64,000 bases of DNA from Auanema rhodensis (GCA_964057225.1 OZ059897.1:13702001-13766000); one strand, 5' to 3'. Shown: positions 5,647 to 28,000, counted from the stretch's first letter. Made by a program: numbers and translations. The notes: generated by a model not told the origin, from the sequence alone.

Positions 5647-8600
5647 TCACAGTTAATGAATGTATGTGGGCAGGAAAAAGCTTAACCTTCTTCAGAAAAA
5701 AGGAAGCAAATTACGAGAACACGGCTGAAATACTAGCAGATGTTGATTATTGCAAGAACAGGCTTTCGGAAACTCTATCTATAACACCTATAATCATGCA
5801 CTATATTCGAATTGTGGGAATAAAAACATTTCTGACACGCCTTCTAAGTTTGAAAAAAAAAGTTTCGGCTTTAAGAGATAGCCAAGAAAGGTTTACGGCT
5901 AAAGTACTGTGCAATTTAGGATCATAGATAGCCGCTAGAAGATACAAAGAATAATGGAAAACGATGACTTCAATAAAAGGATGGACTGGAGAGAAGGGCT
6001 TGACGAAGAGGGTGAGAGAAATTAATGGTTTAGCACATGGCGTAATATCCTGATAAAGCCCGCAGGGACACGAAGTTGACAACCTGATCAGCCGCACTTT
6101 GCGTAATCCTTTAGTATAATGCATAGCTTTCGGTTTCCTGCTTCAATTTTAAATCTTGAGAGAAAACTGATGAAGCTTAAAACAATGAAAAACACGATAA
6201 ATGATCATGCTAGGTAGACTAATGTATGATGTGACTATTTTAATGAAGCAGACACTAATGTTTCATTGAAAACATCTTATATAGCTATATGCTAGCATTA
6301 AATGATCTTGAAAGCTTTGAAAACGAATAAGGAATCATAAAATTCATCATTTCTTTGCATATAATGGGAACTTTCATTTATTCCGACAAATATCAGAAAA
6401 TACAGGATAAGTGGACACTTGAATCACACCGTACACAATCTATACTTTCAAATATAAGAGAAAAAAAAAGATTTTTTTCTCATGTAATTTATTGCGAAAG
6501 AATATATTTCTTTCTTAGTGTGTGGCAAACAACATTATAAATATTGGTTTACTATATTATATAATTAGTTAAAATAACGTAATGAATATAAAGATTTTTA
6601 ATAGTGTCACATATCAATTGATCATATTGAAACCGTATATTGAGATTAATGTCAAAATGATAATATCTATGTATATTTTCCCAACGCTCATAATACATCA
6701 ATGAAATCAACAACCGCGTTATTCATCTGTAATCAATCAAATGAGCTTTTATTCAAATTTAAATGAGAGTTCAATAATCTGCGTCTTCCTTATGATTCGT
6801 TATCATTTCAACCTTCATTTGCATATTTTCATTATAATCCAATTTAGAAAAACGTTGATATTGATGTTAAATAGATTTTTAATTTATATTTTTTAATTAT
6901 TTTAATCATACCATTTTATAAAATAAAAAATATTATTCATAGGTACTTATATATGTGTAATATTTATACATATTTGTCTTATACAACTATTATTTCTTAA
7001 ATATTTTTATTTTCAATTTCATTTTTATAAATAGAATGTACTGAAAGTAAATTTAACTAGCAATACTTGAAAATACCTTGAGATCAAGCAACAATAATAA
7101 AACATTTGAAAAATTCAATAACATTGTAATTGAGCACTTTTTCCTAGATTCGTTTCATTACTGAACTTCTCAAGGTAAACGTTTACATAATATTTTCTTT
7201 AAACCATCAGAATAATTTCAAATATTAGGCTTTTACTAGTAGGTAATATCATATCGATTAACGTTAACCCATGTTTAATATGCATGTGTGTTTTCTCCTT
7301 CCGAAATACACCATGATTTAATCAATATATCAATTAGAATCATTTTAAGATTATCCATTCTTATTATTAATAATAATTTTTATTTTTTTTATTATTCTAT
7401 AATGAGGAGAGAATTGATATTCAAAGTGATTTGTTAATAGAAATAGGGTTTTTATCATTAACAGTTCAATTAATTTTTTGATTATTAATTTTATTATATT
7501 TCTGATGTCTAATTGAATCTTTGATTCTTTTCTTTATTTTTTTTAATATTCTTATAATATTTTTTTGTAAATTTATATTAATTATAGAATATATTCTTAC
7601 TGTCTATTTCTCTTTCTTACCCCTCTGTTCCATCTCAATTTTTCATCATTTTAATTCTCATCAAATATAATATTATAGAATTGACAGCTATAGTTTTCAT
7701 GTAAAATGATTATAAAAAAGATAAGAATTTCTTATTTTTATCCTTCAATCATATTTATATATTTCCAGAATCATTTTTTCTGACAATGAACATCCGATAT
7801 TGTTTTGATAGATTCTAATCTCCGAGCCTTTTTCCTAATTGATTTAGTTGCGAAATTGCTTATTCAACAAATATTAATAATCTTTTAAATATAATTGTTA
7901 TGTTTTACATAATAATTGAAGAAACCAAATTTTCTATCTTACAATAATGAATTGACTATGATAGTATAGTTTACTGAAAGAAACTTCCGTTTTTTTTCAT
8001 ATCATATTGAGAAATGTATGATAAGCAATTGACCATGTGAGATAATTTTCTGAAGAATTGGAGATCGTCGATTTAGTTTGTGTGCTTACTCAAGAAAATA
8101 ACAAAGTAAATAAGTTTTACGTTACGACTGTAGAAAGGCATACAGCAGTGAATTGGTACTGATAAGAAGAGGTAGGGTTGGGAAAGTGATATTCTCTTCC
8201 CTCTCCTCACTTGTCTCTCTATATCTTTTTCTCTTTTTCTTTTTCAACTATTTCACTTCTTTCTTTCATTCGACATTTTTCTTTTTTTTTTCATTCTTAC
8301 TTAATTCCTCTCATTTTCTTATACATCAAAACTAATTCTCTCCTTTTTCTTTGTTATCCATTTGCAGACACAATTCGTTGGCACATTCTGCCCTTTCAGT
8401 TGAGCTCATACTTTTGTTCATCATTAAGAGTTTCAAGGACAATTATCGTTCATACAGTTACTATTTACAAATCTTTTTTTTCCTATTCTTCTATATTTAC
8501 TTACCGGACAACTACTCATCACTCTTTCTCATGTACATGTGCTCGTTGATTAATTACGATTTTTAAAATACATTTTTATTGTTTACTTTTTCATCTTCTA

Positions 8601-8789
8601 TCATCAAGCCTCTTCTTCGTCATCCTACTTCTACCACTTCACTTTCAGCATTTAATACCATTAAAATGGCCTAAGATCATTTTCTTTTCATCTAATTTCT
8701 ATCTTGTAACTTGCCATTTATTTCAGAAAAATATTTCCCCTCTCTGGAAAAAAAAAACTTTATACGTCGTTGAATGTGTACTGTAAGAC

Positions 8790-10696
8790 ATGTCAGGTTT
8801 TGAGATCGAGTATTTTCATGATCCTTTTAAATGCTCATTTTCGTTTTCTTTTTTTTTTTAATTAAACTACATGATCTTAGATGCGATAACTTAATTCAAC
8901 TTATATAACTTAGAATCAAAAAAGTTTTAAAATTCAAATTGTATCACGTGCTTCAGTTTACAAATTTGTTTTAAACAATGGCACTATTTGACTTAATTAC
9001 ACGCAATAGTAGACAATTTTTATTTAATGAACTAAAATTTGACAACATATTTAAGTAAAAAGAAAACCAATAAACACAATACAACGTCTTTTCTGAAATC
9101 ATTACTTAGTTATCTTTCTAGCAATTCGAACCTGTTTGCATTTTTGTTCATACAATTGAGCGTAGAACACGCCTTTATGAAATAGCTAGTATCTAAGATG
9201 TTGGATCTATTATATCTATTTGTCTTTATACATTCTTAATAATTATTAATTAAAACTCATTAAATATATTATTTCATTGAAATATTTCTCAGCTATTCTT
9301 ATCATTTTATCAAGATAAAGCATGCAGATAAAATTATTTTTTCTTTTATTTTGTCTTTTTTGTTGAATACGGAATATGCACCCAATCTTTATCGGATGCT
9401 CCTATGAAATCATCCAAACAACCGTTTATAGCCTCTTTAAATCCAAATTCTTTTTTTTTCTTTTTTTAGAAACATGCCATGCTTGATATTTGCGTTCAGA
9501 ATATTTTGATTAAGATTTAGTTCATTTGTTTGTACCTATCAATCAACACAAATGCAAGACAAATTATACTTGTCCATTGTAGCGATGGCTGGAAAGTTGA
9601 TATGATAACTATAAAAATCAATAACTTTTCTTTTTTTTTCTTGTCTATTATATTTCTTTTTCTTATCATCAACATCTTCGTAATCGTGTTCATACTTGAT
9701 GATTATTATCATTTTTCTCTTGATTTCATTCAGTTACTCAACTTATTTCATATCTTCAACTTCTTTTTATCATTGGATCTTGAAATATTCACTCACACCT
9801 GCCAAACGATTAATCGAATATTTAGATAATTTGTCGGCATTCTGGAAATTTCCGCCATGTTTTTCTTACTAAAAATATTAAGTAGCAAAGATTTTTATTC
9901 ATTTTTTCCAAAAAAAATTGTAAATAAGTTATAAATCTATGTTAAATAAAGCTTATGTTCTTTTGATTTGAATACTTTTTTATACATTTTCTATTCTTAA
10001 CCCTCGCTTCTCCTCTTTTTATTATTTTTAGGTCTTTCAATTTCTACTATAAATTTAATCTTAAGTTTTTGTTGATCAAAAAACATAATTTAACAAAGTT
10101 TTTGAATCTGTTGATTGTTGACCAACACCTAGTGAAACTAACAAAAACATCTTCTCCCGGATTATATCTGTTTTGTAAAGCCAAATCTATTTATTGAATG
10201 ATGAAATCTTTAACATAAAACCCTACAAGTATCTTTTTTCGTCGTTTTTCCAATTTTTTTTTCTCATTCTCTATTCATATAATGAGTTTAAGGAAGCTTT
10301 TCTGCAGAGTGATATAGCTGATAAACTATAGCAATGAACTTTATCCCTCTGTTACAACTTTTTCAAATTTCATCAATATGCCCAGCTCTGCAGACAATGG
10401 CTCTTCTCCTCAGCACATAGCACAAACCCTTATCTTATTGGCTCTTGAGAATTTTTCGTCTAAATTTCAACAATATTAACTATTAGTAGAATATATAAAA
10501 AATAAATAAAACCTTCTCTCATTGGTCTTGTAATGAAATCGATGAAACTGTCCGGTTTAAGAAAGATCAAAATCAGCATTTTGACCAAATTTATTTTGAG
10601 GATCAGCTGCTAGATGTATGACACTGAGTTGTTTTCAAGCCTTGATTCTATAGAAATTTTCTATTACTTGTTTTATACATACACATACACATATAT

Positions 10697-10780
<84 letters not shown>

Positions 10781-11785
10781 TTCTGTTTTTCTCTTAGCTT
10801 TCTAGATGTCTTCATTTCAACTCTCACCCTATCTTTTCATCCTATTTGCTCTTCTTTTCCATCTCAACTCCATTTTTGTTCCTCCTCTTCTCTCCCTTTG
10901 TCTCACTTTATCTGCCCTTCCTCTCCCTCATTCCCTGTCTGGTTCTCTCTTCATCTTGCCTACTCTTCCCCTTTATCGGTTAATTTCCGATTTTCACATC
11001 AACGTTTTCAATTCTAACTTATTTTTGTTACGATATCTCCAATCCCGGAATTTGGAAGCAATTTCATAAGAACAGCTGGTATTGATCTTAAAATCAATAA
11101 AACATGATGATTTCTGTTTGAAATAATTCTATTTGAAGATATATATATATATTTCATCAAGATGTATAGCATAAAGTTTTTAATTTTTATTTATTAACCA
11201 AGAAATTAATCAGATGATTACACTAATTATTCTTTATATCTCTGAATAATGAGAATAAATAGAAAATTTGATTTCAGATTTCCAATTTGACTCCTACAAG
11301 CTCTTCCCATATTCTATTTTATATCTCTGTGTTCGTTGTTTTGCTCGAAACTTCTTGAATTCACTTTATTGATTGAATAGCCACGAAAGTTTCAGATTCC
11401 AAATGTTCAATATACAGTGTATGTTGTCATTTCTGTTTCCAATCACTCATAACATAAAAAATTTTCCGACCAAGATGCTCATATATCCTTTCACTACTTT
11501 TAGATATATATTATTTCTCGTGATTTTTTTAGTTTTAATATTTTGATACTTTATTTTATAAACCATCAATCATTTCAACGGCTTATCTCCGAAATTTAGC
11601 ATCTAAAGTCCATATTTTAGTGTTATGTTGTTTTTAGATCATATAGTGTTTCTTCTTAAGCTGACCTCCATTTAGAAAAATTATTCCTCAGCCGATACTT
11701 TTCCTATGTCGCTGCTTTGTAGTCCAGCTTTCCTATTTTTCCATAATAATTGTTATTTTATTTCCTTTTGTTTATTCAATTATTC

Positions 11786-11845
<60 letters not shown>

Positions 11846-14800
11846 ATAGGCATTGGAAACACTTGTCTATTAATTGAATAGAAATCATTGCAAAATATTC
11901 TCATAAGCAGAAAGTGAAAGAAGCAGTTTTTCTCTTAATATTCCATAAAAAGAAAGCTAGTAGTGAATACCAACGATAGAAAGAGAAAGAGAGAGAGAGA
12001 GATTGGATGAATTGTCATTCAGGGTCGTTATCATTTGTTCTAAAATTAGAAGCTTGTCAAAAATGGCTAGCTATGCGTCATATAAAAACATGTATACTAT
12101 TTTCTGGTTATCTATGTTCTTTATTTCAATTTCATATATCATAATAGTCAGTTCCAGGCCCTTCAACGGATATGACCGAAGAAATTACAATATTAGGTTG
12201 GATTTTGATGTATGTTATGTGAAAAATATGATTGAAAATGCGTTTTGCTATAACATTTCTATTTTGTGCACAGAAAAAGCTTTTATGTTACAATTAAGTT
12301 TTTAAATAAGTTCATATATTATTAATTTCTCTATTCATCATGTGTATGAAGTTTCAGTTTCGGAAGATGATATCATAGAAGCAACCGAACCCTTCAAACG
12401 CCAGGGAGCTGTGGCAATTGCCCAATTAGAAGAGGTTTTTATTTTCAAAAAATTAATTTAAATTTAAAAATATTAAAAAAAAAACTTATTTGTTAACTGT
12501 TTTCGATTTTATTTTTAATCAACAACCGGTCATGTTATCCACTAGCAAAGAAATGAAATTAGTGATGTTCACGTGTTATTATACTATTTCACGTGAAAAA
12601 TATCCTAATCCACGTCATATTTCAGCAATTGAAGAAAACTTTATCTTCATTATCGATCGTAATCGATAACTCTAGTTCAATTAATGATATTATTAGTAAT
12701 AGTTTGCCTCAGTTAACCCTAATTTGGAGAAAGCGAGCAAATAATTCCGAAATTGCTTTCAAGGTATATCTATTGACTATTTTGCTCATTCAATGAATTG
12801 TTTTATTAAATTTTCCAATTCCAGGGTTTACTCATTATTTTGGAATATTGCCTGTCAAAGTCGTTCGAGGCTCATTTATGTTTTGAGCAGTTAGTTAACG
12901 TTCTAGGGTTTCATACAGTGCAGTTTTGGAAGTAAGTCAATACCTGTTTATTTATTTTCCTTTTTTTTTAATTTGTTTAATTTTGTCAGATATTCTGTTC
13001 CATATATTTTCGATTCCGATTTATCGAAAGGCACCAAGTATCGAGATTCGTTATTATTTTCTTTAACGCTCTATGATATCAACACCGGAAAAAGTAGATT
13101 GAAGTGAGAATATTTTAAAGTTTATCAAATTGAAAACAAAAATTCATCTTAAGAGAACTTTATGCTGCTGTGCCTGGTATCAGAAAATCTTTATTAGGCC
13201 AACATGCTAAACAATTTGGAGAACGGTATCATCATCTTCAGCGACGTCTCTCACGTCATAATTCCGTCAATAGCATTAACAGTATTGAAAGTTGTGGAAG
13301 TGAGAACGTAGAGGGTACTATTATCATATCATTAGTTTAATAATTTATTATCTTTCTTGTAAAGTACTTGGAACTCCGACTAGAAGAAAGTCTTTTGATT
13401 CCAATGTATCTGATATAGAAGATGGAAAAAATGAAGAAGATGATCATGCGCGTATTTCTAGTGGAGGATTGGCTACAAACCATTTCCAAGTTCGCATTTG
13501 TTATTCAAAATACTTCTTTCTTCTATATGTTTGTTCGAGAAATACTTTTCTTTGTTCAGCAACGTGTGATCAATGTATCAAACGCTCCTCCAGTGTCATT
13601 GAAGAGGGAAAAAACTGGGGACTGGGAAATCACACAAGGCTCTGGAGGCTTAGTAGCATGTGTTGATCCTGTAATGTCAAAAGATCATGAAAACATGTGG
13701 TTAGCTAATTTGGGAATGAATATAAATCAGAAAAGAAGAAGGTTTTAATGAAAAGCGAACTAATTTTTTTGAGAAAAATATTTTTAAAGTTCGTTCCAAT
13801 CGGATTGTTCTAATTTGGCTCCATCAACCAATACTCTTGGATTGCCTTTGATTAAGCAAGCAATTGCTGATGTAAGTGTTGTTTATACTATAAAAATGAT
13901 TTTTATTTTGAAGGTTTTCTTCCATTTTTTGGCAGATGATGAAAAGGTTGAAGCTTCATCTCCAGACGAGAAAGAGGAACAGCAGAGAAAAGCCAGGCTA
14001 GAAATACACATATCTATATCTAAACTATACTATTATTCAATTACAGAGAAGAAATGTCCCTTCTTGGAGTTTTACATAACTATAACCGAGGAAATTACAA
14101 ATTGAATCCTGTTATAGTACAAGAAGACGATTACAATGTAAAATATTATTTTATATATAAAATATTTTCAATTTGTTTCATTTAGGTCTACTATGGTGGA
14201 ATCAGTAATGGTGTCTTATGGCCAGCACTTCATAATCTTCCAGAATATATTGTTTCTGATTATGATGATCCGATGGTTTGAATATATTATTAATATAAAA
14301 TATTATATTTTTTAAGACTTTAAAAGATCATTGGTGTGCTTATGTTCGCGTCAATTACCAGTTTGCTATTGATGCTGTTAGAAATAGCAGACCACAGGTA
14401 TAACATTTCGAATATAAATTTTAAATTTTATTGAATATAGGATTTCATCTGGATTCATGATTATCATTTAATGCTTACTGGAATGATCATGCAGTCATTA
14501 GATCCCAATTTGGAGGTTTTCCAGATTCATATAGTTTGTTGATGTTGACATGATATCTCTGTTTAGGTTGGATTTTTCTTGCACATTCCATTCCAGCCAC
14601 CTGAGAACTTCTTCTCGAAGTATGCTACTTGTGGATTCCCCATGCTTCGTGGTCTTTTGAAATTCACAAAGGTAAATAATTTTTGATTACGTTTTTTTTA
14701 AATATATAAATAATATTAATATGAATGAATATTATAATTATTATTTTAAATTTTAGGTTGGATTCCAAACTCATCGTGATCGTGAAAAATATATTGAATT

Positions 14801-17800
14801 AGTCAAGAAATATCTTAAAGGAATTACTGTTAATTATGATAAAGTAACAGATATTTATACAGGTTTTTTATATTTTTTAATCGATAATTTATAATATTTC
14901 AAACAATTTATTTAGCTGTTCATGAAGGTTGGACTTGTTCATTAGGTGTTTTTCCTGTCAGTATAAAAAATGATGATTTCTTGAAGTTTGTTCCACTTGA
15001 AGAAACCAAAACATTGAAAAAAAACTTCCGTAAAAGGGTATGTTGTATGCAAATATTAAGATTTTTCAATAAAACGTATGAAATTAAGGTTTTGGGATCT
15101 AATCCACCACCTGATGCTCGCTTCTTTTTCTCAGTTGAAAGATTTGACTATACTAAGGGAATCAAGGAGAAACTATTGGCCTATGAAAGATATTTTGAGA
15201 AATATCCAGATCGTGTGGGAAAAGATGTTTTATTCCAGGTAATTTAAAATATTTTCAATAATGATACTTAATTTTTTGTTTCAGATTGCTGTTACAAATC
15301 GTCGTTCAGTTGATACCTACCGTGTATATCAAGATGACTGTATTGCTTTAGCTGATAGAATTAACAATCGCTTTGTTGATCCAACGAATAAAACATGGAA
15401 ACCTCTCATCTTCCAAACTGACGGTATAACTATTTTTTGAAAAGATTCTGAATTTCAATATTTTATAGGATTACCACGTAATGAATTGGTCGCGGCTTAT
15501 CTTGCTATGGATATTGGTATTGTTACTCCAAAGAAGGATGGCATGAATTTGGTATTCTATTTAATTTAGTAAATATGAGTTAAATATGTTTTAAGGTTGC
15601 AAAAGAAATGCTGGTATGTAACCCTAAAGCAGGTTTAATCTTATCAACCGGAGCTGGATCTGAAATCCAATTTACTTCATCGGGTCTATATAATGTTGAA
15701 GGAGAGAAGAATTATCATCGTGTTGATAATTTATACGACATTGAAGTATTTATTTATTATAATAATCATCTCATTAATTGCTTCCAGGCTTATGCTGATT
15801 CATTCTATGCTGCTGCTCTTGAACCTGAAGAACTTAGAAGCCAACATGGTCATCGCTTGAATGAATTCGTCCTAGCTAATGATATTGAACGATGGAGTAG
15901 TGCTTTCCTCGACCCTAGCTGGACTCATCAAGTCATCAGACCACAGCAGGTTAGAAGATGCAGCTTTCTGTTCTTTAATTGAAGTTGTATGTTTGTAGAT
16001 TGAAACATTGGATGATTTCTACTCATTAATGATGAGAACTTGTAATGTTCGTAGACAGATAGTTGACCGAGTTCTTAAAGGAATTCCTATTCGTGCTCAT
16101 TTCGCTATCAGCTTACGAAATGCCAAGGTAACGAGCATTCGTGAATTTATAAATTATTCATCAAAATATGTTCACAGGAATCGCTTGAGAATAGTTGTAG
16201 CCTGGACAGTCATACATTGGTTTTAAAATCAAGTCAAGATTCACCAGATCGGGCACGTTTGGACATCAAAAATGAACTTGATGAATTTGAAAAGGTTTCA
16301 TTTTTCACATAATCAAATATAAGTTAATAGATAATGTTATAGGATTTATCATTCCTTCGATATGTTGAAAGTGACGATGTTGACAACGTGGAACAGTTCG
16401 TAGCAGTTAGTTTCTTTGATAATTTTTTTAAAAACAAATATTCAAATTATTGTGAGAGAAGAAATAATATTTAAAGCAAAATCATAAAATTATATAAAAA
16501 AATAGAAATGTACTAAAGATTATTGGAAGTGATCGAATATTTGTTGATGAGAACAAATCTTCCTTTGAATCGCAATGTTTTTTATACTGACGACATGCAA
16601 AATGCTTTGGATATTTTGATTGGCATTTCGTCTTCCATGCTAAACATTGTTGTTTTCTATTTTTTCTTTTCTTGTTGCTGATAGATGACACCATATGAGG
16701 ATATAAATTATCCTAAATATCCGGAAGTAGATTGTTGAAGAATTAAAGATAAACTACCATATCTTTCAATGTACTATTTCCTGAGTAGCTTGAAGTAGTA
16801 TTATGGCAGTTTTTGTCATAAAAGAAACAATGACCCACATGTCCTCTCTTCTTCTTGTTGCAATTGCTCAGCAAATCGTGGCATTTCAACGATATTTCTG
16901 GTATTTGCTTGAGAGCAGAGGTGTTATAATGAAAACTGTAGCAAGTTTTTGACTGACTTCAAGTTTTTGTTTCACAGTTTCTTCATCTTGAGTCATTGCG
17001 TTAGATGAACACCAATATGGCCTACTCGTTTGGCAGTCTAAAGCACAATGACATAGCATTCGATAACAGTCTACATTTCCAAAGTAATAGCAATAATCTT
17101 CATTTCTGAAATAATTTATATAGAATCAACTTTCAATTTTAATTATAATGTTTGATATAAGTTTAGTTAAAAACATACAAAATTGAGCATTTCGATATCT
17201 GACAAGCTTGAATGCTGCTATTGCTGGCTTCAAACTTTAGAATGCATATGAATAGTAGTAGAAGAGTTTTAGCTCCAGATAAAATGAAATATTTCATCAT
17301 AATAAGCCAGCTTGTGTGTAGGTGTGTATATGATAAGACTAGATATAAGAAAATAAGACGATTTTAATTGTAATTATAGTTTATAACATAAAATTTAAAA
17401 AATAGAGAAAATAGAATTTTGAAAATTGAATAAGTTTGAAATAGTAAGATGTATGTTTTAAACTATCTATTAGAGAATTTATTTTATTAAATGAAAGAAC
17501 TGGTTCATCTAAAGTTTGTCACAATGATAAATCTAACTGATAGAATATTATTGAGAATAGAAGAGAAAAAAAATGAAAAAAAAAGTGATTTTATGAAGCA
17601 ATTAACAACTAAAGGTCATGGCTATTTTCGTAAAATTTGGCAATCTATGTTGTATGTCCTTAGCTATTACTTGCTAATCAAAATAAACATTTGTGGTTTA
17701 TAATAGTCTATAAGTAAGTTAAATCTCAATTCTATTAAGGATTTAATATTTGAAAGAAATTACAAACAATGACAATTAAAGAAAGAATGAAATTAATGAA

Positions 17801-20800
17801 AAAACAAAACATGATTTGTTTTTTGATAATAAATCAATAACAGGACTGCTTTTATAATTTTATATACAGTCATGTGTGATCAAAGTCGGACCTAGGTTTC
17901 TGAAAGGCCTCAGAAACCCGCTTCTCAAACTACAAACCAATTTTTTTTTAATTTATCAATGTTTTACATTCATGTATTTGATGAAAATATATGGTAAAAT
18001 AATAAAAATTGAATTTTTTTGGAATATTAGGGGAAGAATTCTGATAAGAGTCCGACTTTCATCGCACATGAAATTTATTTTAAAATTTTAAAGTTCATTC
18101 TAATGTGAACTATGAATTTGTAATCTTCAATGTTAGGTAGTTAATGAATTTGAAAAGCCTGCTTGATGCAATGCAGATTTAACGGATTTTGATTTCTCTT
18201 ATAAACAATTTTCGAAAGAGATTGTCCTCATTTTTCATTTCCATGTAGTATCTTCCTTTTCATAAAAGTTTTCTTCTTAAATTACAAAACTTTTGAAAAA
18301 AAAACCAGTTGAACTGCTTTGTAATTTAAAAAAAAACTATAAAACTGTGCTTTAGCTTCATAAACGTATTTGTAAAACTCGTATGCTCTTTTTCTATTCC
18401 TATTTTTTTGAAATATAATATTTTTTTTATTTTTTGTCTTATAGTATAGCTGAACAACTATAAATTCATTTTCCACCCAATAGAAACTATAGAAAATAGG
18501 AGAAGGAGAGAGAGAGACTTTTGAGCATGAGAGATAAATGGATAACATGGCTGCTTTGATGTCTCGAAGTGGAAAACCCGGTGGTAGCTTGAATTGTAGC
18601 CTAGCAACCAGCACACCATGCATATTCTCTTCAATACATTCGCTTTTCTCGCTCTCTATCTTTCTTTCTCCTGAACTTTTCTCCTCTCTATTTCTCTGGT
18701 GGTTACTCTTCAGTGCTTAATTCTCATACTATGCATCTATATGCATTGGCGATCTATTGACACACCTTGCGTTCTAGTCAGTTCAGCAGGTAGAAAGTCC
18801 CTCCCTCTTCCTGTTTAATTCTGTTTTTTCTATTTATTTGTTCACAATCTTCTATTTCGGAGTTAGTTATACTTGTTTCTAATCATTTAACGATTTGACA
18901 TTTTTTAATCTGAAATAACGTGAACTGATTCAATCCTTACAGAGTCTTTAAATATCAAGCTCGATAGCCTTCTTTCGTCTAACCTCTCACACAGATTAGC
19001 TGAGATAATCACTCAACTGCGACCTATCGTATAAACAGCTATTTATATTCCGTTCATAAGTGACAAAACTGTATTTGGTTAAGTTTACATAACCTGTCAA
19101 TTCGATCAATAAGCTATATACATATTCATTCACTATCTCTATAACTATGGGCTTATTAGACATAATCAAATCATTCAAATCTAACAATGGTCGTGAGATA
19201 CGTATTCTTCTACTTGGACTAGATAATGCTGGAAAAACGACATTACTCAAGCAGATTTCAACGGAAGATATTAACAACGTTGTTCCAACCAAGGTAGCTT
19301 TTACAATAAGTTCCGCTGATCTCTATTTCTGATCTTTTCCTCCAAATAGGGCTTCAATGTCAAATCGGTTGTAACAAGTGGAGATATTCGGCTTAATGTT
19401 TGGGATATTGGAGGCCAACGAGCTATTCGCCCATTTTGGTCGAATTACTTTGACAATACTGATGCATTAATCTATGTTATCGATAGTAGTGATCGAAAAA
19501 GGTAATTATCAAATGTAAATGAGAGTAGTTTCGAATATGCCTTCTCTTACTTCAAGAGAATCTGTTAAATTCGAAACTTAAATTTTTCATCCCATCACAC
19601 CTTGCTTTGACTTGATTTTCTTAAGATTTGATGAAACAGGGATGGAATTAATGGAATTACTGGAAGAGGAAAAATTGGAAAAAGTTCCAGTCCTCATATT
19701 TGCTAATAAGCAGGTTGGTATCACGTGATATATGGAGCTCAATATAGGAATTCTTGACTTGATTAATTTTTTTTGCTCATGAATATTCGAGATTATGAAT
19801 ACTCCTACCAATCATCTATTATTTTGCATAGTGTTCTTACAGGACTTACCTACATCAGCTAAAGCTTCCGAGATTTCTGCTCGTCTGAAGCTTACTGAAG
19901 TTCGAGATCGTGCATGGCAAATTGCCGCTTGCTCAGCTATATCTGGTGAAGGTGTTAGTGAAGGAATTAGATGGGTAGCTGATACAATAAAGGATCGCAA
20001 ACGTTAAATTCACGACATTGAATGAACTTTTTCTCAGGTTTAAGCGATCCTCATGTAAATCTCTCATGTCCTCATAATTTCCATTTTCTATTGTATCTCA
20101 TGTCCTTTCGTTTCTTTTCTACTTTCTCATTCAATTATCTGGCTAAATCGGTATAGATCAAAGATATATACCAGTAAATATGCCTTTTGAGACTTTTTCC
20201 TAAGAAATAATTTGAATTGAAATAAATAATAAAATTTCAATTTCTATATTGAATTATAAAAAAACTTTAATGTTTTTTCTTTATTTACATCATGAATTAT
20301 TGAAGCTTTATCATTTTTCATTCCATGGTGGCAATATGAAAATTAATTCAGTTCAGCTCGCTTTATTTTTATTTTTAATTATAATAAATATTAATTATAT
20401 GGACTTTGTAATATGTTGATTAAAACTGGAGTAGAGTGTTGAAATAGTGAAAAAGAAAGAAAAAAATTAATTTTATTTAGATTTAATTCCTTAAAAACTT
20501 ATTAATTTATCAATATTCATTCAGACATTGACAACTTCTACTTATGTATCTGAACAGGAATTTAAAGATGAAGTTCAAGGGGTATAATATTTTGAGTTGA
20601 AAATCCACAGTTTCCTTGATTTTCTAGGCTGTTGATTTGCTGTACCAAGCTGATCATTTCCAATATTTTTTCACTGATCGTGATGGAACTCTCAAAAGTT
20701 ATTCGTGTTCATATCCTAGTAGTATTCAACCAGCGTATTCTGGTGTTATTCAGGTGAGAATAATTTTTTAATAAAAACATATATTGAACAGAACAAAATA

Positions 20801-22081
20801 GTTAATTTTATAAGAGAATAGCTATGCTTAAACTGGACACAACCTGTTTTTGCGTTTTATTAGTAAAAATGAAAGCTGTTCTGAATAATATTATACGTTT
20901 TCACACGTGAAAGCTTATAAATTGTGTATTATTCTTTATTATTATAATTAATGATATTTATGTAATATATACATTATATTTATGTCTCTAGGCTCAATTT
21001 GCTCGACGATGTGCTCAGACTTGTTGTATTCTTACGACAGCTCCTCTCATGCATATTGGTAATATTAGTTTTCAGTTATTTCATTTAGCACAAAAGGAAG
21101 TTTTTTTTAGGAATTCTTGACGTATCAACAATTCCCCCTGGATATTACTATTATGGTGCTTCTGGTGGACGTGAATGGTTTATTGATCCAACGAATAAGT
21201 TCAAAGATACAAGTATTCCTGAAGATCATCTAACTATCTTGGATACGGTATGTTGACAGAAAATTAATTTTCTTTAAAAAATGATATATTCGATTTCCAG
21301 GTGTTCAATGAAATTTCCCATTTGCTTGAAATTCATGATTTCAAGCCATTCACATGGGTTGGCTCTGGTCTACAGAAACATTATGGACATTTAACTATTG
21401 CTCATCAAGATATTTATGGATCTGTAAGAAAAATCATTAAAATAGTAGACGATGAAGTTATTTTTTCAGGTTGGAGAAGCTCAAAGTGATAGACTTTATG
21501 CGGAAATATCACGCATTGCTAAAACTATTGATAAGGATGAGAGTATTTTGACTATTAACAGAACTGATTTAGACATCAAGATCATGCTTAAAGTAGCATT
21601 TTAGATAAAATTTTGAGAATTATATTTGTTTTTTTTTCAGGCGAAAGTTTCAGGAAAGGTTTGGAACAAAGGACATGGTCTGCATCTACTTTGTGAGAAA
21701 ATGAATTGCGTTCTCAAGGTTTGATTTCATTCATTCTGATAGAATCAAAAAACTTGTTGTCTGTTTAGGAGGGAAATCTTTTAATCTGTGGAGATTCATC
21801 TTCTGATTTACCCATGCTTGAAGAATGTCTTCTTCAGAATCCACAAGGAGTCTACACCATTTGGGTCACTACAGATGTGAATCTACGTAACAAGGTATTT
21901 TGCTTTTATTTTCATATTCTAACTGAATAACGCCATATAGGTAACCGATCTCTGTTCTTCCTACGGTAATACTAATGTGGCCTTTGTGTCATGTCCTGAA
22001 GTATTGCTTGGAGCTATGGCTCAGGCAACTATTCGCGAAATTAATATCGATAGACAATCTGATAGTCAGGAAGATGATTAA
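8790..22081 (+). CDS. tps-2: Trehalose-6-phosphate synthase (GT20 domain plus C-terminal HAD-like domain), tps-2-like
   Basis: Motifs [101 protein letters not shown]; stop at 22079-22081. Exons are confident from 12358. The micro first exon ATG TCA G|gt at 8790 is tentative (phase 1, matching the 12358 acceptor). tps-2 rather than tps-1 rests on recalled sequence and linkage to arl-3. Confidence 0.9.
10699..10778. repeat. (AT)n microsatellite, ~40 units
   Basis: Perfect AT run read directly. Confidence 0.97.
11787..11843. repeat. (TA)n microsatellite, ~28 units
   Basis: Perfect TA run read directly. Confidence 0.97.
12569..12617. promoter_or_regulatory. Cluster of E-box/ACGT sites in a tps intron
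   Basis: CACGTG at 12570, TCACGTGA at 12589 and CACGTCA at 12611, with 20-21 bp spacing in AT-rich DNA. Confidence 0.4.
16482..17300 (-). CDS. Secreted cysteine-rich protein (~216 aa) with hydrophobic GPI-like tail, nested antisense in the tps intron
   Basis: Four in-frame exons 17300-17179, 17105-16958, 16907-16758, 16712-16482. Signal peptide [25 protein letters not shown]. Cys-rich N-domain, two C-x6-C-x9/10-C-x6-C units, and tail [15 protein letters not shown]. Confidence 0.75.
18596..18608 (+). promoter_or_regulatory. Candidate RFX/DAF-19 X-box upstream of arl-3
   Basis: GTAGCC-T-AGCAAC fits the RFX consensus GTNRCC(N0-3)RGYAAC, ~540 bp upstream of the arl-3 ATG. ARL3 is a ciliary GTPase. 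Confidence 0.55.
19147..20007 (+). CDS. arl-3: ADP-ribosylation factor-like GTPase 3, nested on the same strand in the tps intron
   Basis: Exons 19147-19293, 19350-19501, 19626-19713, 19843-20007. MGLL N-terminus, GLDNAGKTT (G1), WDIGGQR (G3), FANKQD (G4), ACSA (G5); PTKGFNVKSV is typical of ARL3/ARL2. Confidence 0.92.
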
Positions 22082-24172
22082 GATCAGATTTTTTCCAATT
22101 TTTTTTATAAAAAAATGTTTTTCTTCTCTATGTCAAGTTTAATATATCATATTAAGGTAATATGTATCATATCGCTCATGATTGCTAGCTGTTGCTATAT
22201 ATATTTTTTGTTTATTTTTTTGAAATATTTTCATTTTGAAATGATTTTTTTTTATTCGAAGAAACTGAGACTTTTTTTTTGTGTATATGTCGGGTCTTTG
22301 AAGAGAGTAATAAAGTATTTTTTTTTGTCTTTCAATATCGTCTTATTCTTATTTTACTTTTTTTTTTGAAACAAACTGATTTTTCAATATAGAATCTTCA
22401 AAATTCAAAACAAACCATTGCTATTTCAGATGACAATTTCGTCATGTTAATTTTCATTATTATTTCCTTGTTGTTCCCTCATAACAGTAAGAATACTCAG
22501 AAAAAAACATTTCTTTATTTTCAGCTGTTTGACCTTTATTTGTTGCTTTTAGTTTTTTTATTTTTATTTCATCTTTTCACTATCGCTTTCTGTTCTTTTT
22601 TTTCTCTTTTGAATACATCGAAGATCTATTCTAAAGATAGATGTATACTAAAAAAAAAATTCTTTTTTTCATTTTCTGAACATTAGATATTCACTTTTGA
22701 AAAAAGCTAGTTTATTGCTTTTCTTGCTCGAGCTTTTGCAAGCTTGTCCTGAAACTATTTAATCTCAGATTCGCATGAACTTGGCAAGTTTCAAAGAAGA
22801 TTAGATGTTTCCGGCTTTTTTGAATTGTATGCAAAAATGTGAAAAATAGTTCTTTCTTATACAAAAAAAAAAACGGATGCATTGTATTAGTGCTATCTTA
22901 CTTGAATATTAAACATTAACTTTATGCATATACTTATGTAAGTTTAAACAACTTTCGTATATTTTATGATAAACGCATTGTATAATTCAATTTTAATTAT
23001 TTCTTTTTTTTGTTGGAAGAATTTAAATGAAAAAAAGCTATTTTTCCTGTTTTGACTCTCAAAAGAATTTTGATCATCAACAGAAACCTGACCGCTTCCT
23101 CTTTCAACGTAATTGGAAATAAGAATTTCACGTGTAAACGAATATATCTATATTTTAAAAGTTAATTAGAATATTCTTTTTTTCATTTTATCTCATATAT
23201 TTATTTATTCAAACATAGAAACAATACAACTTTTTTTTTTGACTCGATGTATGCATGTAACTCATCTCAAAACATGGTGAAATGAAAAAAAAATTATAAA
23301 TTATTCAATATATTAATTTAATTATTTTGAACTGTTTTCTTATGTTTTTTTTTCTTCATTTTAAGATAAAACATAAGGATATTACGTGAAATATTAATCA
23401 TATTCCTTTCATGTTTCGTTCTCTTTTGTTATTTTTGTTAAAGAAGAAAAAAACTTAATTTTACTTTTCTCTCTTTCCATTCCTTATTCAGATGTCAGCT
23501 TGTTGACCCGCCTCCCAGCTTGTCTTCTATCCTCAGACAACTTTCATCCCTCCTCACGTAGTTGACTCGGCTTCATTGCAACTTCCGTTGATAACTTTTG
23601 CATATATACTGATTATATATTGAAAAATATTTTCCTCCAGGAAAAAGTTGAAACATCTGCAATCATGTTTCTTAAAAAAAGAGCAACAGTTTTGTGTAAA
23701 ATTTGAAGTTTTAGTTATCACCAATATGAAAACTGAACTATTTCCATTATTGATCATTAATTTAATCTTTTATAAATATAGAAATAAATAAAAAAAACAT
23801 AATTTGAATAGTTTCATAATTATTTTTATAGATTATATTTATTATTTTTTGACTTATTATTCATTTTGCAATGTAATGACTACCTTCAGCAGTTTTATGG
23901 CAAAACAACTCACAGATATACAAAGTACTTATGCCGTTTTTCTTACATTTTATTGGCTTTTTGCTTTATATTAGCTTCTTTAGATTATTTCTGTTTCAAA
24001 TAATATCTGTAAATGGTCTCACTGTTCATCTTCAAACTTATTTGATCTCAATAGTCTTATTCAATGTATTTTAATTGTTCTCATCATTAACCTCGTTCTT
24101 CACTGAATAACTTTTGTAAATTCATCATTTTAAAACTTGCAGCTTTCAACTATTTCATCATCGAATTTCCAG

Positions 24173-25040
24173 ATGGCTAATGCACCAGCTGATCCGCATC
24201 ATTTCTCGTTTTCAAATCATAAACCAGTGAGTTTAACATGTTGCTAATATATATTTTTTTATTGTTAAAGAAAACTTTTCATCATGAATAAATGAAAAAT
24301 TAGAAAGTCTAGTCTGAACTGACAGAACATTCTGATAGTATCTCAGATTTGTTTTCCTTTTGTTTTGGCTACTATTTACGGGAAAACAGCTTAGGAATAT
24401 TTAGAAAAACACACTTAATTCTATAAAAAAAAATAATTGATAGGATTTGTCTGATATACGTTTCCGTATATAAAATAATTTATATATATCATTCAATTTT
24501 CAATAAAAAAATATGCTTTGATGTACAATCTAATATAATTATATATACATATAGCTATCTATCTATCTATATATATTTAATTAAAATACAGTATATGATG
24601 TGATCTTGTCTTCTTAATTCAAGTTCATGTAATTTGAACTTACTGCTGCTGCTGCTGCTGCTGCAAAACTTCATAGTCCTTATAGCAGTCGTAGGAAAAG
24701 AGCAAAATCATGTGAATTTGAGTCGTTCATCAGATTGCTGTCTGAGATTTTAGGGACATTTTTTGAAGAAAAAAAAGCCGAAAATCACATCAAAAACTCG
24801 TCTCAAAGCAATAATTCGTTTACAGCATATGTTCATCGTAATATGATGATGGTGAGGGGAATGAATTGATTGTGGACTATAGTGAGTTAAGAAAGATTAG
24901 AGAAAAAAGCTATTTCGTGTCAAGATATACGTTTTGTAAAAATTAGTATGATATGTGTTATACTTCTAGTGTGTATTCACAGAGATATACAGAAATTGAG
25001 AGAAATAGATAAAGAGAGAGAGAGAGAGAGAGAAATAGAT

Positions 25041-25077
<37 letters not shown>

Positions 25078-28000
25078 AGGAGAAAAGCACTGTCATGATA
25101 AGAAATCTTAACACTTCTTCTTTTGTTAAATGTAAAGATTATGTTTTGAATTTTTGTGATTTTTAAGTAAAAACTTTATATCTTCTAGTCTCTTATTTCA
25201 TTTTTCTTTTCTTTCAATAGCTATTAAACACCCATAACCCATTTCCTGCTTCCTTCAACGTTATTACCCTTCAAAGCAAGCAAAATGGGAGCAACCCGCT
25301 TACTTTACCGAGAATTTTTTTTCTGCGAATTTTCCTTTTTTCTTAAGTGACTTGAAGTAAAAGCGCAGAACGGAAACTTTACTTAAGTATGATCTGTCTC
25401 TATTTAAATTGTTTTGTTGATTTATGAAGGCTTTATGAGTACTTTTAAGCTATTATTCGTCTTTTTCACATTTTTTGTCAACATCAACTCTGAACTTTAA
25501 GATAAGAAAACTAATTTTTGCAGTTCTCGCTTCTCATATCCATCTTTGAGCATCAATCCCGAGTCACAACATGCACACTACATATCCCCATTTCCTTTCC
25601 AACAGTCTTTAAATGAAATTTCTTGTTTTCTGCTTAATGCTTTTTACTTTCATTCTTTACTCTTTCTTATTTGCCCTCATCTCAGTTTCCAAACTCGAAT
25701 TTCATTGTTTTTGAAGTTGTCTTACAACTTAATTAAGTTTAACTATTCCCTTATTTTATATTTTTTTATATAAAAAATATTAAATAATCTAGTTATATAT
25801 ACATAGACAGATATGTAAACGATTACTAAACATATCATATTATTATTTTTTTAATTTTTATATTCATAATCCCATTATTTATTTGTTTTTTAAACTATAA
25901 TATAGAAGAGTCTTTAAAACAATTTGATTTATTGAATTAGATACCATTTATCAGAAAATAATGTCATATTTCTAAAGCTCAATATTGAAATGTTTTAAAC
26001 AACAATGCTTTTGAGAAAAAACTATTTAAAAAAAAAGAAAAGAAAAAGTTTTCTCTGAACCAGTTTTGAACAACTGAGTTTGTTACCTCATCTTGACAAA
26101 GTTGTATGCCAAATAAACAACTTTTGAGCTTGAGCTCAAACACTACGAGCGCTAACTTCTATACATCAAGTATATGTTTTATAATATATATCTATATATA
26201 ATCATGTCTTTCTAATTAAATACGCAAAACCGAAATGATGCAGGTTCTGATATAAGTAATAAAGGTTCGGAAATAAGGAAATAAGCGGGAGTTGCTCCCC
26301 GCTGCTGCAGCTTCTTGTATAAGGGAAAGCCGTTTTCATATTTTCATTCAAATAATTCTGTGACGTCGCAGTACTGAGGCAGTTTGCGAATGTGCTTGAT
26401 CATTTGATTTTTTTCTTTTTTTTTCTTCTTGGGAATCTAGTCAATTCAACCATCGCAAATGCCTTCTAGACGTTGTCAGGTTAGCCATATTGTTTAATCG
26501 TTCAAGCATGTTCAACAATGTTTATACACAATAATTTTTTTTTATCTATGAATGTATAATATAGTTTTTATATATTTCTATGTGAATATTAGATGTAAAG
26601 TTGTTTCTTTTCTTATTTTTTTAGAATTCAAATTATTTAATTGTTGAGCAAGGAATGATATTGATATGTATAAAATAAACTAAAACATATAAATAATATA
26701 AATTAATTTGATTTTAGTATTAAACTTTTAGTTTTTTTAAGAATAATGTAATTTATAAAATATATTTATAACTTTTATTTATTTATAATATGAATAATAA
26801 TTTAATTATTATATTTAAATCTTTTTCTCCTTTTCAAATATATTTTATTTTGATTTTTGTCCTTATCTAACCTTTTATTATGTGTTGACTTATTTCCCTA
26901 TTACAATGAAATACACTTTCTTCTATAGAAAATAAAAATACATTTCCAGTATGATTGAAGAAGTGCAATCTTTAGACTAAATATTGCAAAGTAACCGCTT
27001 TTGACTTTCTAAAAATGAAAAATGAAAAGCCACCATTTTTCCGAGTATTCCAATCATTCATGCAACAGTCTTTAGAAAAAAAAACCTTTTTTAAACCAGT
27101 TCAATCAGCAATATTCTGTTATTTTAGGAGGTTTTTTACCTTATTTTAACCTCAACTATCTATATCTATCTATATCTATATGTTTCTTTTTAATATTTAG
27201 AATAGAATAGAATTATTTTATGTTTTTAGTATTAGATATACATCATTTAACTTATGTTTATGCAAAATCATGGAATAGAAAGCAATTTATAACAAAAAAT
27301 TAAAAAATATAATGTTTGAATAATTGTTTGACTAAGCTATATGATGCATAGTAGATTGCTTACTCTCGCAAATTCTCATTATTCCAACTTAAAGGTAAAA
27401 AATTACTGATGAGTAGATCTTCATTTATGCATGACGAAACAAGGAACAAATAAAAGCCAAAAGACATGCATTCTCGTTTTTTTTCGCTTCGCAAGCTTTT
27501 CTATTCCGAAAGTCAGTTCCGTTTCTTGAATTTTTAGTCGAACTTTCAATTCAACTGTTATCGCTTTACAAACAAAATTATAATAATTTGATAATTTGAT
27601 AGTTTATTTATACTTTGATACCTATGTTCTCTAAGTACTTCTTGTTCACTTACTATGTCAACTCTTCTTATACTCATTATATTCGAATCATTTTTGCTTT
27701 AAAAGCAAAATATTTGCAATTTTCTTCGTGTTAGATGCAATAACTCTTGAATTTGTCGTCTGATGTATAAATTAAATTTAAGGACTTAACATTCGAATTT
27801 TGCGAAAATATTAATAGTTATTCCATATATTTCGTTGTCGTCCCTAGTACATTTGATGTCGTATGGTTTACCATTCTTAGAATTTTCTTCATATTTGAAG
27901 CTATTTTTGAATAAAAATATTAGAGAGATAACTACTTATTTCTATAAACTTTTACTTGAATTGCTATAAAAGAAAATTCTGGTTCCGGAAAACAAGCTTA

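What the first reader, a model, noticed from the sequence alone, without database searches (positions are those of the whole stretch)
16406..20524. Three-gene nesting: same-strand arl-3 and an antisense Cys-rich gene inside the intron separating the TPS synthase and HAD-like domains
Seen: TPS coding stops at ...VEQFVA|GTTAGT (16405) and resumes at TTCAG|TLTTSTYV (20525), just before the [11 protein letters not shown]-type motif. The 4.1-kb intron holds a complete 4-exon arl-3 on the same strand, with AATAAA at ~20221, plus an antisense 4-exon gene. Known: nested genes are usually antisense, and same-strand nesting forces the host transcript to ignore the guest's splice and poly(A) sites. From memory (unverified), C. 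elegans tps-2 and arl-3 share cosmid F19H8, so the arrangement may be old and conserved. Inference: use of the arl-3 poly(A) site would give a synthase-only TPS, a possible tissue-specific switch linking trehalose metabolism and ciliated neurons.
Basis: partly seen in the sequence, partly recalled or inferred. Interest (0 to 1): 0.75.

Follow-up and report, generated by a model that had tools for sequence, protein, structure and literature searches.

The report
ARL-3 gene nested inside TPS intron
In this roundworm a small cilia GTPase gene (arl-3) and a small cysteine-rich gene sit inside one intron of a trehalose-synthesis gene; the layout is real but ordinary, because the same three-gene arrangement is already annotated in C. 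elegans and is shared by its close relatives.

Summary
A trehalose-6-phosphate synthase gene (12172-22081, + strand) has a 4119-nt phase-0 intron (16406-20524). That intron holds a complete 4-exon arl-3 gene on the same strand and a 4-exon cysteine-rich gene on the opposite strand.

The layout is not new. C. elegans tps-2 (F19H8.1) carries arl-3 (F19H8.3) and the antisense F19H8.2 in the same intron, in the same order and orientations. The tps-2/F19H8.2 pair is listed in a published table of nested genes. Haemonchus and Auanema share all three genes, and Pristionchus shares arl-3.

In Brugia, Trichinella and Bursaphelenchus, arl-3 stands alone. The same intron position exists empty and tiny: 40 nt in the B. 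xylophilus gene and 45 nt in C. elegans tps-1. So arl-3 moved into an old intron in an ancestor of the Rhabditina.

arl-3 has a candidate RFX X-box upstream, conserved in Auanema, which suggests its own promoter.

The proposed poly(A) "switch" giving a synthase-only enzyme has no support here and could not be tested. Many public ~900-aa TPS models and Arf::phosphatase fusion models look like annotation artefacts of this nesting.

The scan noted other same-strand nested genes elsewhere in this genome, but not this locus on other DNA.

The parts
12172..22081 (+). Host gene: tps-2 ortholog (trehalose-6-phosphate synthase: GT20 + T6PP_N + T6PP_C domains), about 20 exons
   Evidence: The start MTEEITIL is identical to the Auanema model. 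The gene is collinear with P0007 and P0068 over their full length. Pfam GT20, T6PP_N and T6PP_C hit exon by exon. The stop is at 22079-22081.
16343..16405 (+). Last host exon before the nest ([21 protein letters not shown]); end of the T6PP_N domain
   Evidence: T6PP_N profile positions 77-96 of 99. The donor GTTAGT follows at 16406.
16406..20524 (+). Host intron (4119 nt, phase 0) that holds both guest genes
   Evidence: The same position is a 40-nt intron in the B. xylophilus TPS and a 45-nt intron in C. elegans tps-1.
16482..17300 (-). Antisense guest: 4-exon gene for a 216-aa cysteine-rich protein with a signal-peptide-like start; ortholog of C. elegans F19H8.2
   Evidence: Exon model with GT..AG borders and consistent phases. 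It is collinear with and homologous to L001:7298-8710(-) and to the Auanema antisense gene, and exons 2 and 4 match Haemonchus. There is no Pfam family.
18596..18608 (+). Candidate RFX/DAF-19 X-box (GTAGCCTAGCAAC), 551 nt upstream of the arl-3 ATG
   Evidence: It is the only match in 64 kb, against 0.08 expected. It is conserved at the homologous place in Auanema, L003:16346-16358. C. elegans arl-3 has a consensus X-box at -151.
18733..18778 (+). Conserved non-coding block upstream of arl-3, possibly a 5' leader exon or core promoter
   Evidence: About 88% identical to Auanema over 41 nt in otherwise diverged DNA. The function is inferred only.
19147..20007 (+). Same-strand guest: arl-3 coding region, 4 exons (19147-19293, 19350-19501, 19626-19713, 19843-20007), 183 aa
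   Evidence: The exons are 96-100% identical in protein to the Auanema exons and about 75% (52% for exon 4) to C. elegans arl-3. It is single-copy in this genome.
20221..20233 (+). Two overlapping-range AATAAA hexamers, 214-221 nt after the arl-3 stop: likely arl-3 poly(A) signal
   Evidence: The evidence is weak on its own, since the hexamer occurs 2.25 times per kb.
20525..20581 (+). 19-codon host mini-exon right after the nest ([19 protein letters not shown])
   Evidence: It aligns to C. elegans TPS-2 residues 903-921 and to all other nematode TPS proteins compared.
20628..20759 (+). Host exon with HAD motif I (FFTDRDGT); start of T6PP_C
   Evidence: Pfam T6PP_C profile positions 1-31, E 1.5e-13.

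Best explanation
This is the ortholog of the C. elegans tps-2 / F19H8.2 / arl-3 locus: three separate genes in a nested layout.

The host is a trehalose-6-phosphate synthase with a C-terminal phosphatase-like module. Its pre-mRNA removes one 4.1-kb phase-0 intron, which lies at the boundary between the helical-bundle domain and the HAD domain.

Inside that intron, arl-3 (same strand) and a cysteine-rich secreted-type gene (opposite strand) sit head to head. arl-3 is most likely transcribed from its own promoter, driven by an RFX/DAF-19 X-box in ciliated neurons. It most likely ends at its own poly(A) site.

The intron position is ancient and is normally tiny. In an ancestor of the Rhabditina (Caenorhabditis, strongylids, Auanema, Pristionchus), an intron-containing arl-3 was moved into it by a DNA rearrangement, and it has stayed there since.

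Shown: the anatomy, the orthology, the conservation and its taxonomic limits. Inferred: independent transcription of arl-3 and the way it moved.
For: Anatomy and frames are established.

The same nesting is annotated in C. elegans chromosome II. There tps-2 spans L001:4001-13504, with a minus-strand 303-aa gene at 7298-8710 and a plus-strand 184-aa Arf gene at 10304-11143. The intron lies at the identical codon.

Haemonchus contortus has the same three genes. Pristionchus mayeri has arl-3 in the same intron. Auanema has the same order and strands, although its annotation is split and fused.

arl-3 stands alone in Brugia malayi, Trichinella pseudospiralis and Bursaphelenchus okinawaensis. The B. 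xylophilus TPS has a 40-nt empty intron at the same codon. C. elegans tps-1 has a 45-nt one.

arl-3 keeps introns shared with the free-standing Brugia gene, after PTK/Q and after ANKQ. It is therefore not a retrocopy.

The X-box is unique in the window, with 0.08 expected, and is conserved in Auanema. C. elegans has a consensus X-box at -151.

A 3846-nt intronless C. elegans contig encodes the whole 1229-aa TPS-2, so the halves are joined in mRNA there.

The tps-2/F19H8.2 pair is listed as an opposite nested pair in PMC12274878, Table S1.
Against: No transcript data for this species were available. Joining of the two TPS halves, the arl-3 start site and its 3' end are therefore inferred from frames, homology and C. 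elegans.

The X-box has a 1-nt spacer and lies 551 nt from the ATG, further than the 151 nt in C. elegans. The cited paper warns that an X-box match alone is not predictive (PMC2375033).

The limit to Rhabditina rests on three outgroup arl-3 loci and one outgroup TPS locus.

The antisense gene was not detected in Pristionchus, so the three genes need not have arrived together.
Confidence: 0.85

Rival explanations
1. Processing switch. In some cells the TPS transcript is cleaved at the arl-3 poly(A) site, or elsewhere in the intron. This would give a truncated synthase (GT20 + T6PP_N) without the HAD-like domain, and would link trehalose metabolism to ciliated neurons.
For: arl-3 is on the same strand, so its poly(A) signal is in the sense orientation for the host. 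Public databases hold many ~880-930-aa models with GT20 + T6PP_N only, all from Rhabditina. The intron lies exactly at a domain boundary, so a truncated product could fold.
Against: The truncated models come from genome annotation pipelines. In Auanema and Ostertagia they go together with Arf::T6PP_C fusion models, which is the signature of gene finders that cannot nest genes. The three transcript-assembly (Logan-only) proteins that carry the nematode T6PP_N and T6PP_C domains are full length, as is the C. elegans cDNA-like contig. The translated tail after the donor stops after 22 codons here and is unrelated to the C. elegans tail. AATAAA is common in this DNA.
Confidence: 0.07
2. Chimeric messages. 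Because the host intron and arl-3 introns 1 and 3 are all phase 0, splicing between host and guest exons gives in-frame TPS-N::ARL-3 or ARL-3::T6PP_C proteins that are really made.
For: The phases are compatible. Annotated Arf + T6PP_C fusion models exist: 497 aa in Auanema and 781 aa in Ostertagia.
Against: These are predictions only. C. elegans, the best-curated genome, annotates three separate genes. An ARL-3 lacking its last exon would lose the end of the Arf fold, which exon 4 supplies (profile positions 126-174 of 174).
Confidence: 0.05
3. The two TPS halves are separate genes, or the locus is misassembled.
For: None beyond the split public gene models.
Against: The same order, strands and junction codon are found in five independent genome assemblies. 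There is no start codon context for a separate 3' gene. The mini-exon 20525-20581 is conserved in frame. Synteny with Auanema runs across more than 30 kb of the window.
Confidence: 0.03

Closest known systems
C. elegans tps-2 (F19H8.1) locus with nested arl-3 (F19H8.3) and antisense F19H8.2, chromosome II
   Same: The host gene is the same, and the intron lies at the same codon and phase. The intron size is similar (4240 vs 4119 nt). The guest order is the same, with the antisense gene nearer the 5' end and arl-3 nearer the 3' end. The strands are the same, and there is an X-box upstream of arl-3.
   Different: arl-3 has three coding introns here, and two of those positions are unbroken in C. 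elegans. The X-box has a 1-nt spacer and lies further upstream. The antisense protein is shorter (216 vs 303 aa) and has one copy, not two, of the KYxKHxAC motif.
Opposite-strand nested gene pairs of C. elegans (567 pairs; Soulavie et al. 2025, PMC12274878)
   Same: The antisense guest here is the ortholog of one of the listed pairs, tps-2/F19H8.2.
   Different: That study did not cover same-strand guests such as arl-3.
Shared-leader nested loci of the unc-17/cha-1 type
   Same: A same-strand gene lies inside an intron of another gene.
   Different: Here the nest is deep in the coding region, after about 930 codons, so upstream host exons cannot serve as a non-coding leader. arl-3 has a candidate promoter of its own. 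No shared exon was seen; this was not tested with RNA.
Brugia malayi trehalose-6-phosphate phosphatase / C. elegans GOB-1 (source of Pfam T6PP_N and T6PP_C)
   Same: The C-terminal third of the host protein matches both Pfam domains. It keeps a DxDxT motif (DRDGT) and a GDxxxD motif (GDSSSD).
   Different: Here the module is fused behind a GT20 synthase. Whether it is an active phosphatase is unknown.

Membership tests
ARL3 (Arf-like GTPase 3) - nested same-strand gene | Arf-family fold along the protein | tested here: met
   Pfam PF00025 hits exon 1 (profile positions 3-45), exon 2 (47-96) and exon 4 (126-174); exon 3 was not scanned. Exons were searched apart.
ARL3 (Arf-like GTPase 3) - nested same-strand gene | Closer to ARL3 than to ARL2, ARL1 or ARF | tested here: met
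   For exon 2, the eight best PDB chains are all ARL3 (68-74 bits), ahead of ARL2 at 60 bits. The next-best copy in the same genome is only 58% identical.
ARL3 (Arf-like GTPase 3) - nested same-strand gene | Orthology to C. elegans arl-3 by sequence and position | tested here: met
   73-79% identity for exons 1-3 (52% for exon 4), in the same host intron. F19H8.3 is arl-3 (PMC2375033).
ARL3 (Arf-like GTPase 3) - nested same-strand gene | GTP binding and a ciliary role | not testable with these tools
   The G motifs [13 protein letters not shown] and NKQD are present. No functional assay was possible.
Nematode trehalose-6-phosphate synthase TPS-2 - host gene | GT20 synthase domain followed by T6PP_N and T6PP_C | tested here: met
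   Pfam hits exon by exon. Full-length relatives have the same three domains.
Nematode trehalose-6-phosphate synthase TPS-2 - host gene | Full-length collinearity with TPS-2 rather than TPS-1 | tested here: met
   Among the full-length relatives fetched, the highest summed tblastn scores go to Haemonchus P0065, an unnamed Logan protein P0067 and C. elegans TPS-2 P0068. The locus shares the nest that C. elegans tps-1 lacks.
Nematode trehalose-6-phosphate synthase TPS-2 - host gene | Both halves joined in one mRNA | tested here: inconclusive
   Shown for C. elegans by the intronless contig L002. For this species it is inferred only from frame, phase and homology.
Nested (intronic) gene arrangement | Guest genes lie wholly inside one host intron | tested here: met
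   Guest coding regions span 16482-17300 and 19147-20007, inside intron 16406-20524. Untranslated ends are not mapped. The antisense stop is only 77 nt from the host donor.
Nested (intronic) gene arrangement | Guest has its own promoter and 3' end | tested here: inconclusive
   A conserved X-box and a conserved upstream block are present, and AATAAA follows the stop. No RNA data were available.
RFX/DAF-19 X-box target gene | X-box motif upstream of the ATG, conserved between species | tested here: met
   GTAGCCTAGCAAC fits RYNNYY N1-3 RRNRAC (consensus quoted in PMC2375033). It is the only match in 64 kb and is conserved in Auanema.
RFX/DAF-19 X-box target gene | DAF-19-dependent expression in ciliated neurons | not testable with these tools
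   A reporter or expression data are needed.
Shared-leader (unc-17/cha-1 type) locus | A common 5' exon spliced to either gene | not tested
   No transcript data. The position deep in the coding region makes it unlikely.

The most novel reading that the evidence does not exclude
The nesting is used. Host and guest RNA processing compete, so intronic cleavage at the arl-3 3' end, or phase-0 splicing between host and guest exons, makes a synthase lacking the HAD-like domain, or an ARL-3::phosphatase-like chimera, in particular cells. Selection for this would have kept arl-3 in this intron throughout the Rhabditina.
Probability: 0.07. Interest if true: 0.6.

Novelty: already known. Interest (0 to 1): 0.22.

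Why it matters
The main value is practical.

1. The same nest explains a recurring annotation error in Rhabditina genomes. There are ~900-aa "TPS" models that lack the HAD-like domain, and Arf::T6PP_C fusion proteins in Auanema and Ostertagia. Anyone comparing TPS or ARL-3 proteins across nematodes, including as drug targets in strongylid parasites, would be misled by these models.

2. Deletions made in tps-2 or arl-3 can touch the other gene or F19H8.2, which matters for reading mutant phenotypes.

3. The locus is a clean, datable case. An intron-containing gene moved into a pre-existing 40-45-nt intron and was then kept in place in every sampled Rhabditina lineage.

It does not open a new kind of system.

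Tried and rejected
- **Intron-end stem.** Duplex energies of the first and last 150 nt are no better than shuffles in the window, C. elegans or Pristionchus. Rejected. A first attempt timed out.
- **Non-coding RNAs in the intron.** No Rfam match at E up to 0.1 and no tRNA in 12000-22500.
- **Family of the antisense protein.** There is no meaningful Pfam hit for its exons or for the two C. elegans F19H8.2 open reading frames scanned. The protein-atlas search gave only scores of 0.78, below any useful level.
- **Strict 14-nt X-box** (GTHNYYATRRNAAC) upstream of arl-3 in the window. None was found even with one mismatch. The 13-nt form with a 1-nt spacer was found instead.
- **Literature.** No open paper mentions tps-2 and arl-3 together.
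- **Look-ups that found no record.** M. hapla P0007, Steinernema P0062 and Brugia P0090 returned nothing. Outgroup context was obtained from the arl-3 side instead.
- **MITE-like inverted repeat at 17870-18071.** Only one weak second copy in the genome, so it was not pursued.
- **Joined models.** The joined (spliced) protein models of TPS, ARL-3 and the antisense gene were never assembled or searched. All searches used single exons or stop-free stretches by reference. Word searches for full-length relatives therefore used a fetched full-length protein (P0007) and the long first exon of C. elegans arl-3.
Full report
**What is there**

The window is AT-rich (about 29% G+C) nematode DNA. It comes from contig C5 of a 181-Mb assembly.

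On the + strand a trehalose-6-phosphate synthase gene runs from an ATG at 12172 to a stop at 22079-22081. Stop-free stretches searched one by one hit three Pfam families:
- Glyco_transf_20, in exons between 14441 and 15437.
- T6PP_N, in the three exons 15999-16127, about 16170-16297 and 16343-16405.
- T6PP_C, in every exon scanned from 20628 to the end.

tblastn with full-length relatives shows one collinear gene. M. hapla P0007 (1275 aa) and C. elegans TPS-2 P0068 (1229 aa) align from their N-terminal region to within ten to twenty-five residues of their C termini. The only large gap lies between 16405 and 20525.

The exon ends ...NVEQFVA followed by GTTAGT at 16406. After ...TTCAG, coding resumes at 20525 with TLTTSTYV.... 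Both junctions are phase 0. The 19-codon mini-exon 20525-20581 aligns with the same segment of all nine other nematode TPS proteins compared.

The T6PP_N helical bundle ends exactly at 16405 (profile positions 77-96 of 99). The intron therefore separates the two domains of the phosphatase-like module, not the synthase from the HAD domain.

**The guests**

*arl-3* has four exons: 19147-19293, 19350-19501, 19626-19713 and 19843-20007. Its borders are canonical and its phases consistent, giving 183 aa. Exons 1, 2 and 4 hit Pfam Arf. For exon 2, the eight best solved structures are all ARL3, ahead of ARL2. The gene is single-copy in this genome. AATAAA hexamers lie at 20221 and 20228. That hexamer occurs 2.25 times per kb on this strand, so it is only weak evidence for a 3' end.

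*The antisense gene* has four exons on the minus strand: 17179-17300, 16958-17105, 16758-16907 and 16482-16712. Its introns are 73, 50 and 45 nt, and the phases are consistent. The product is 216 aa with 17 cysteines, a hydrophobic start and a hydrophobic tail. It has no Pfam family.

I never assembled or searched the spliced joined models. All searches were made exon by exon, by reference.

**It is the C. elegans tps-2 locus**

A word search with P0007 returned named nematode TPS proteins, including C. elegans TPS-2. The C. elegans record (chromosome II, 14,596,909-14,614,412) shows three annotated genes:
- tps-2 spans L001:4001-13504.
- A minus-strand 303-aa gene lies at 7298-8710, inside tps-2.
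- A plus-strand 184-aa Arf gene lies at 10304-11143, also inside tps-2.

The C. elegans intron begins after ...NVEQFVD at the same codon and phase, and is 4240 nt long.

The window's arl-3 exons match the C. elegans gene at 73-79% (exon 4 at 52%). The antisense exons match the C. elegans antisense gene collinearly, including shared motifs of the form KYxKHxACRxY and GHC[FY]F[FY][ED]KNC.

The literature confirms the names. F19H8.1 is tps-2 (PMC3670174). F19H8.3 is arl-3 (PMC2375033). The pair tps-2/F19H8.2 is listed among the 567 opposite nested pairs of C. elegans (PMC12274878, Table S1).

A 3846-nt intronless contig from a public C. elegans sequencing run (most likely RNA-seq) encodes the entire 1229-aa TPS-2 (L002). 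The two halves are therefore joined in mRNA there.

**How far the arrangement reaches**

| Species (group) | Finding |
|---|---|
| Haemonchus contortus (Rhabditina) | All three genes in the same intron, which is about 16 kb |
| Pristionchus mayeri (Rhabditina) | arl-3 in the same intron (1.7 kb); no antisense homolog detected |
| Auanema sp. JU1783 (Rhabditina) | Closest relative found; about 71% DNA identity in the aligned, mostly coding, blocks; synteny over more than 30 kb; same three genes |
| Brugia malayi | arl-3 among unrelated genes; no GT20 gene within 10 kb |
| Trichinella pseudospiralis | Same as Brugia |
| Bursaphelenchus okinawaensis | Same as Brugia |
| B. xylophilus | No guest gene in its TPS gene; 40-nt intron at exactly the same codon |
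| C. elegans tps-1 | No guest gene; 45-nt intron at the same codon |

The Auanema annotation splits the host into a 929-aa TPS-N model and a 497-aa Arf::T6PP_C fusion. Ostertagia has a similar fusion model. The eleven or so ~820-930-aa GT20 + T6PP_N-only models all come from Rhabditina.

The nested arl-3 keeps intron positions shared with the free-standing Brugia gene, after PTK/Q and after ANKQ.

I infer the following. The intron is ancient. In an ancestor of the Rhabditina, arl-3 was moved into it as DNA, not as a retrocopy. The antisense gene is either a later arrival or too diverged to see in Pristionchus.

**How it most likely works**

The two guests are head to head, with 1.85 kb between their start codons.

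In that spacer, GTAGCCTAGCAAC at 18596-18608 fits the RFX X-box consensus with a 1-nt spacer (RYNNYY N1-3 RRNRAC, as quoted in PMC2375033). It is the only match in 64 kb, against 0.08 expected. It is conserved at the homologous place in Auanema within otherwise diverged sequence. C. elegans has a consensus 14-nt X-box 151 nt before the arl-3 ATG. X-box-like sites also precede arl-3 in Trichinella and Bursaphelenchus. A second conserved block lies at 18733-18778 and may be a leader exon or core promoter.

I therefore read arl-3 as a separate transcription unit with a cilia-type promoter inside the host intron. The host transcript simply splices the whole intron out. This last part is inference; there are no RNA data for this species.

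**The switch idea**

Nothing here supports use of the arl-3 poly(A) site by TPS transcripts:
- The truncated public models look like gene-finder artefacts, because they go together with the fusion models.
- The three transcript-assembly-only proteins with the nematode domain set are full length.
- The read-through tail after the donor stops after 22 codons and is unrelated to the C. elegans tail.
- No stem pairs the intron ends.

The idea is not excluded. The host intron and two arl-3 introns are all phase 0, so in-frame chimeras are possible on paper.

**Verdict**

The arrangement is old within the Rhabditina and is already annotated, so it is not new. The functional switch remains speculation.

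Earlier notes of this scan (unchecked) list at least eight other same-strand nested genes in this genome, so the orientation is not unusual here. They do not include this locus on other DNA.

Noticed in passing
window:20667-20690 and 21769-21810: The phosphatase-like C-terminal module of the TPS keeps HAD motif I (DRDGT in FFTDRDGT) and a GDxxxD motif (GDSSSD). FFTDRDGT is invariant in eight of the nine nematode TPS proteins aligned (Trichinella has FFSDRDGT). The module may therefore be catalytically competent rather than a dead domain.
   Followed up: partly
L003 (Auanema sp. JU1783, CALQYR020007464.1) 10001-19884; P0145 (Ostertagia); the ~900-aa models: Public annotations in Rhabditina split tps-2 at the nest. 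They give TPS models without T6PP_C and Arf::T6PP_C fusion proteins. This is a systematic artefact of same-strand nesting.
   Followed up: partly
window:17870-17891 and 18050-18071: A 22-nt inverted repeat, 91% complementary, flanks 158 nt and looks like a small MITE. Only one weak second copy was found in the genome (C6:4374172-4374289).
   Followed up: partly
window:18531-18553: A second short block upstream of arl-3 (GATAAATGGATAACATGGC) is almost identical in Auanema within diverged DNA. Its function is unknown.
   Followed up: no
L004 (Haemonchus contortus CP149424.1) 24213-28795 and 30289-34871: The TPS exons for residues 651-932 appear twice, in a tandem segment of about 6 kb, with identical tblastn scores. 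This is either a recent duplication or an assembly artefact inside the host gene.
   Followed up: no
window:16406-16482: The antisense gene's stop codon is only 77 nt from the host splice donor. Its 3' untranslated end probably overlaps the host exon or its donor on the other strand.
   Followed up: no
window:1107-33095 vs L003:820-26551: Gene order is conserved with Auanema across at least 32 kb, including neighbours such as a multi-CUB-domain gene upstream and an M13 peptidase downstream.
   Followed up: no
window:10650-10800 and 11750-11850: Long TA-rich microsatellites, translating as IYIYIY in several frames, lie upstream of the TPS gene.
   Followed up: no
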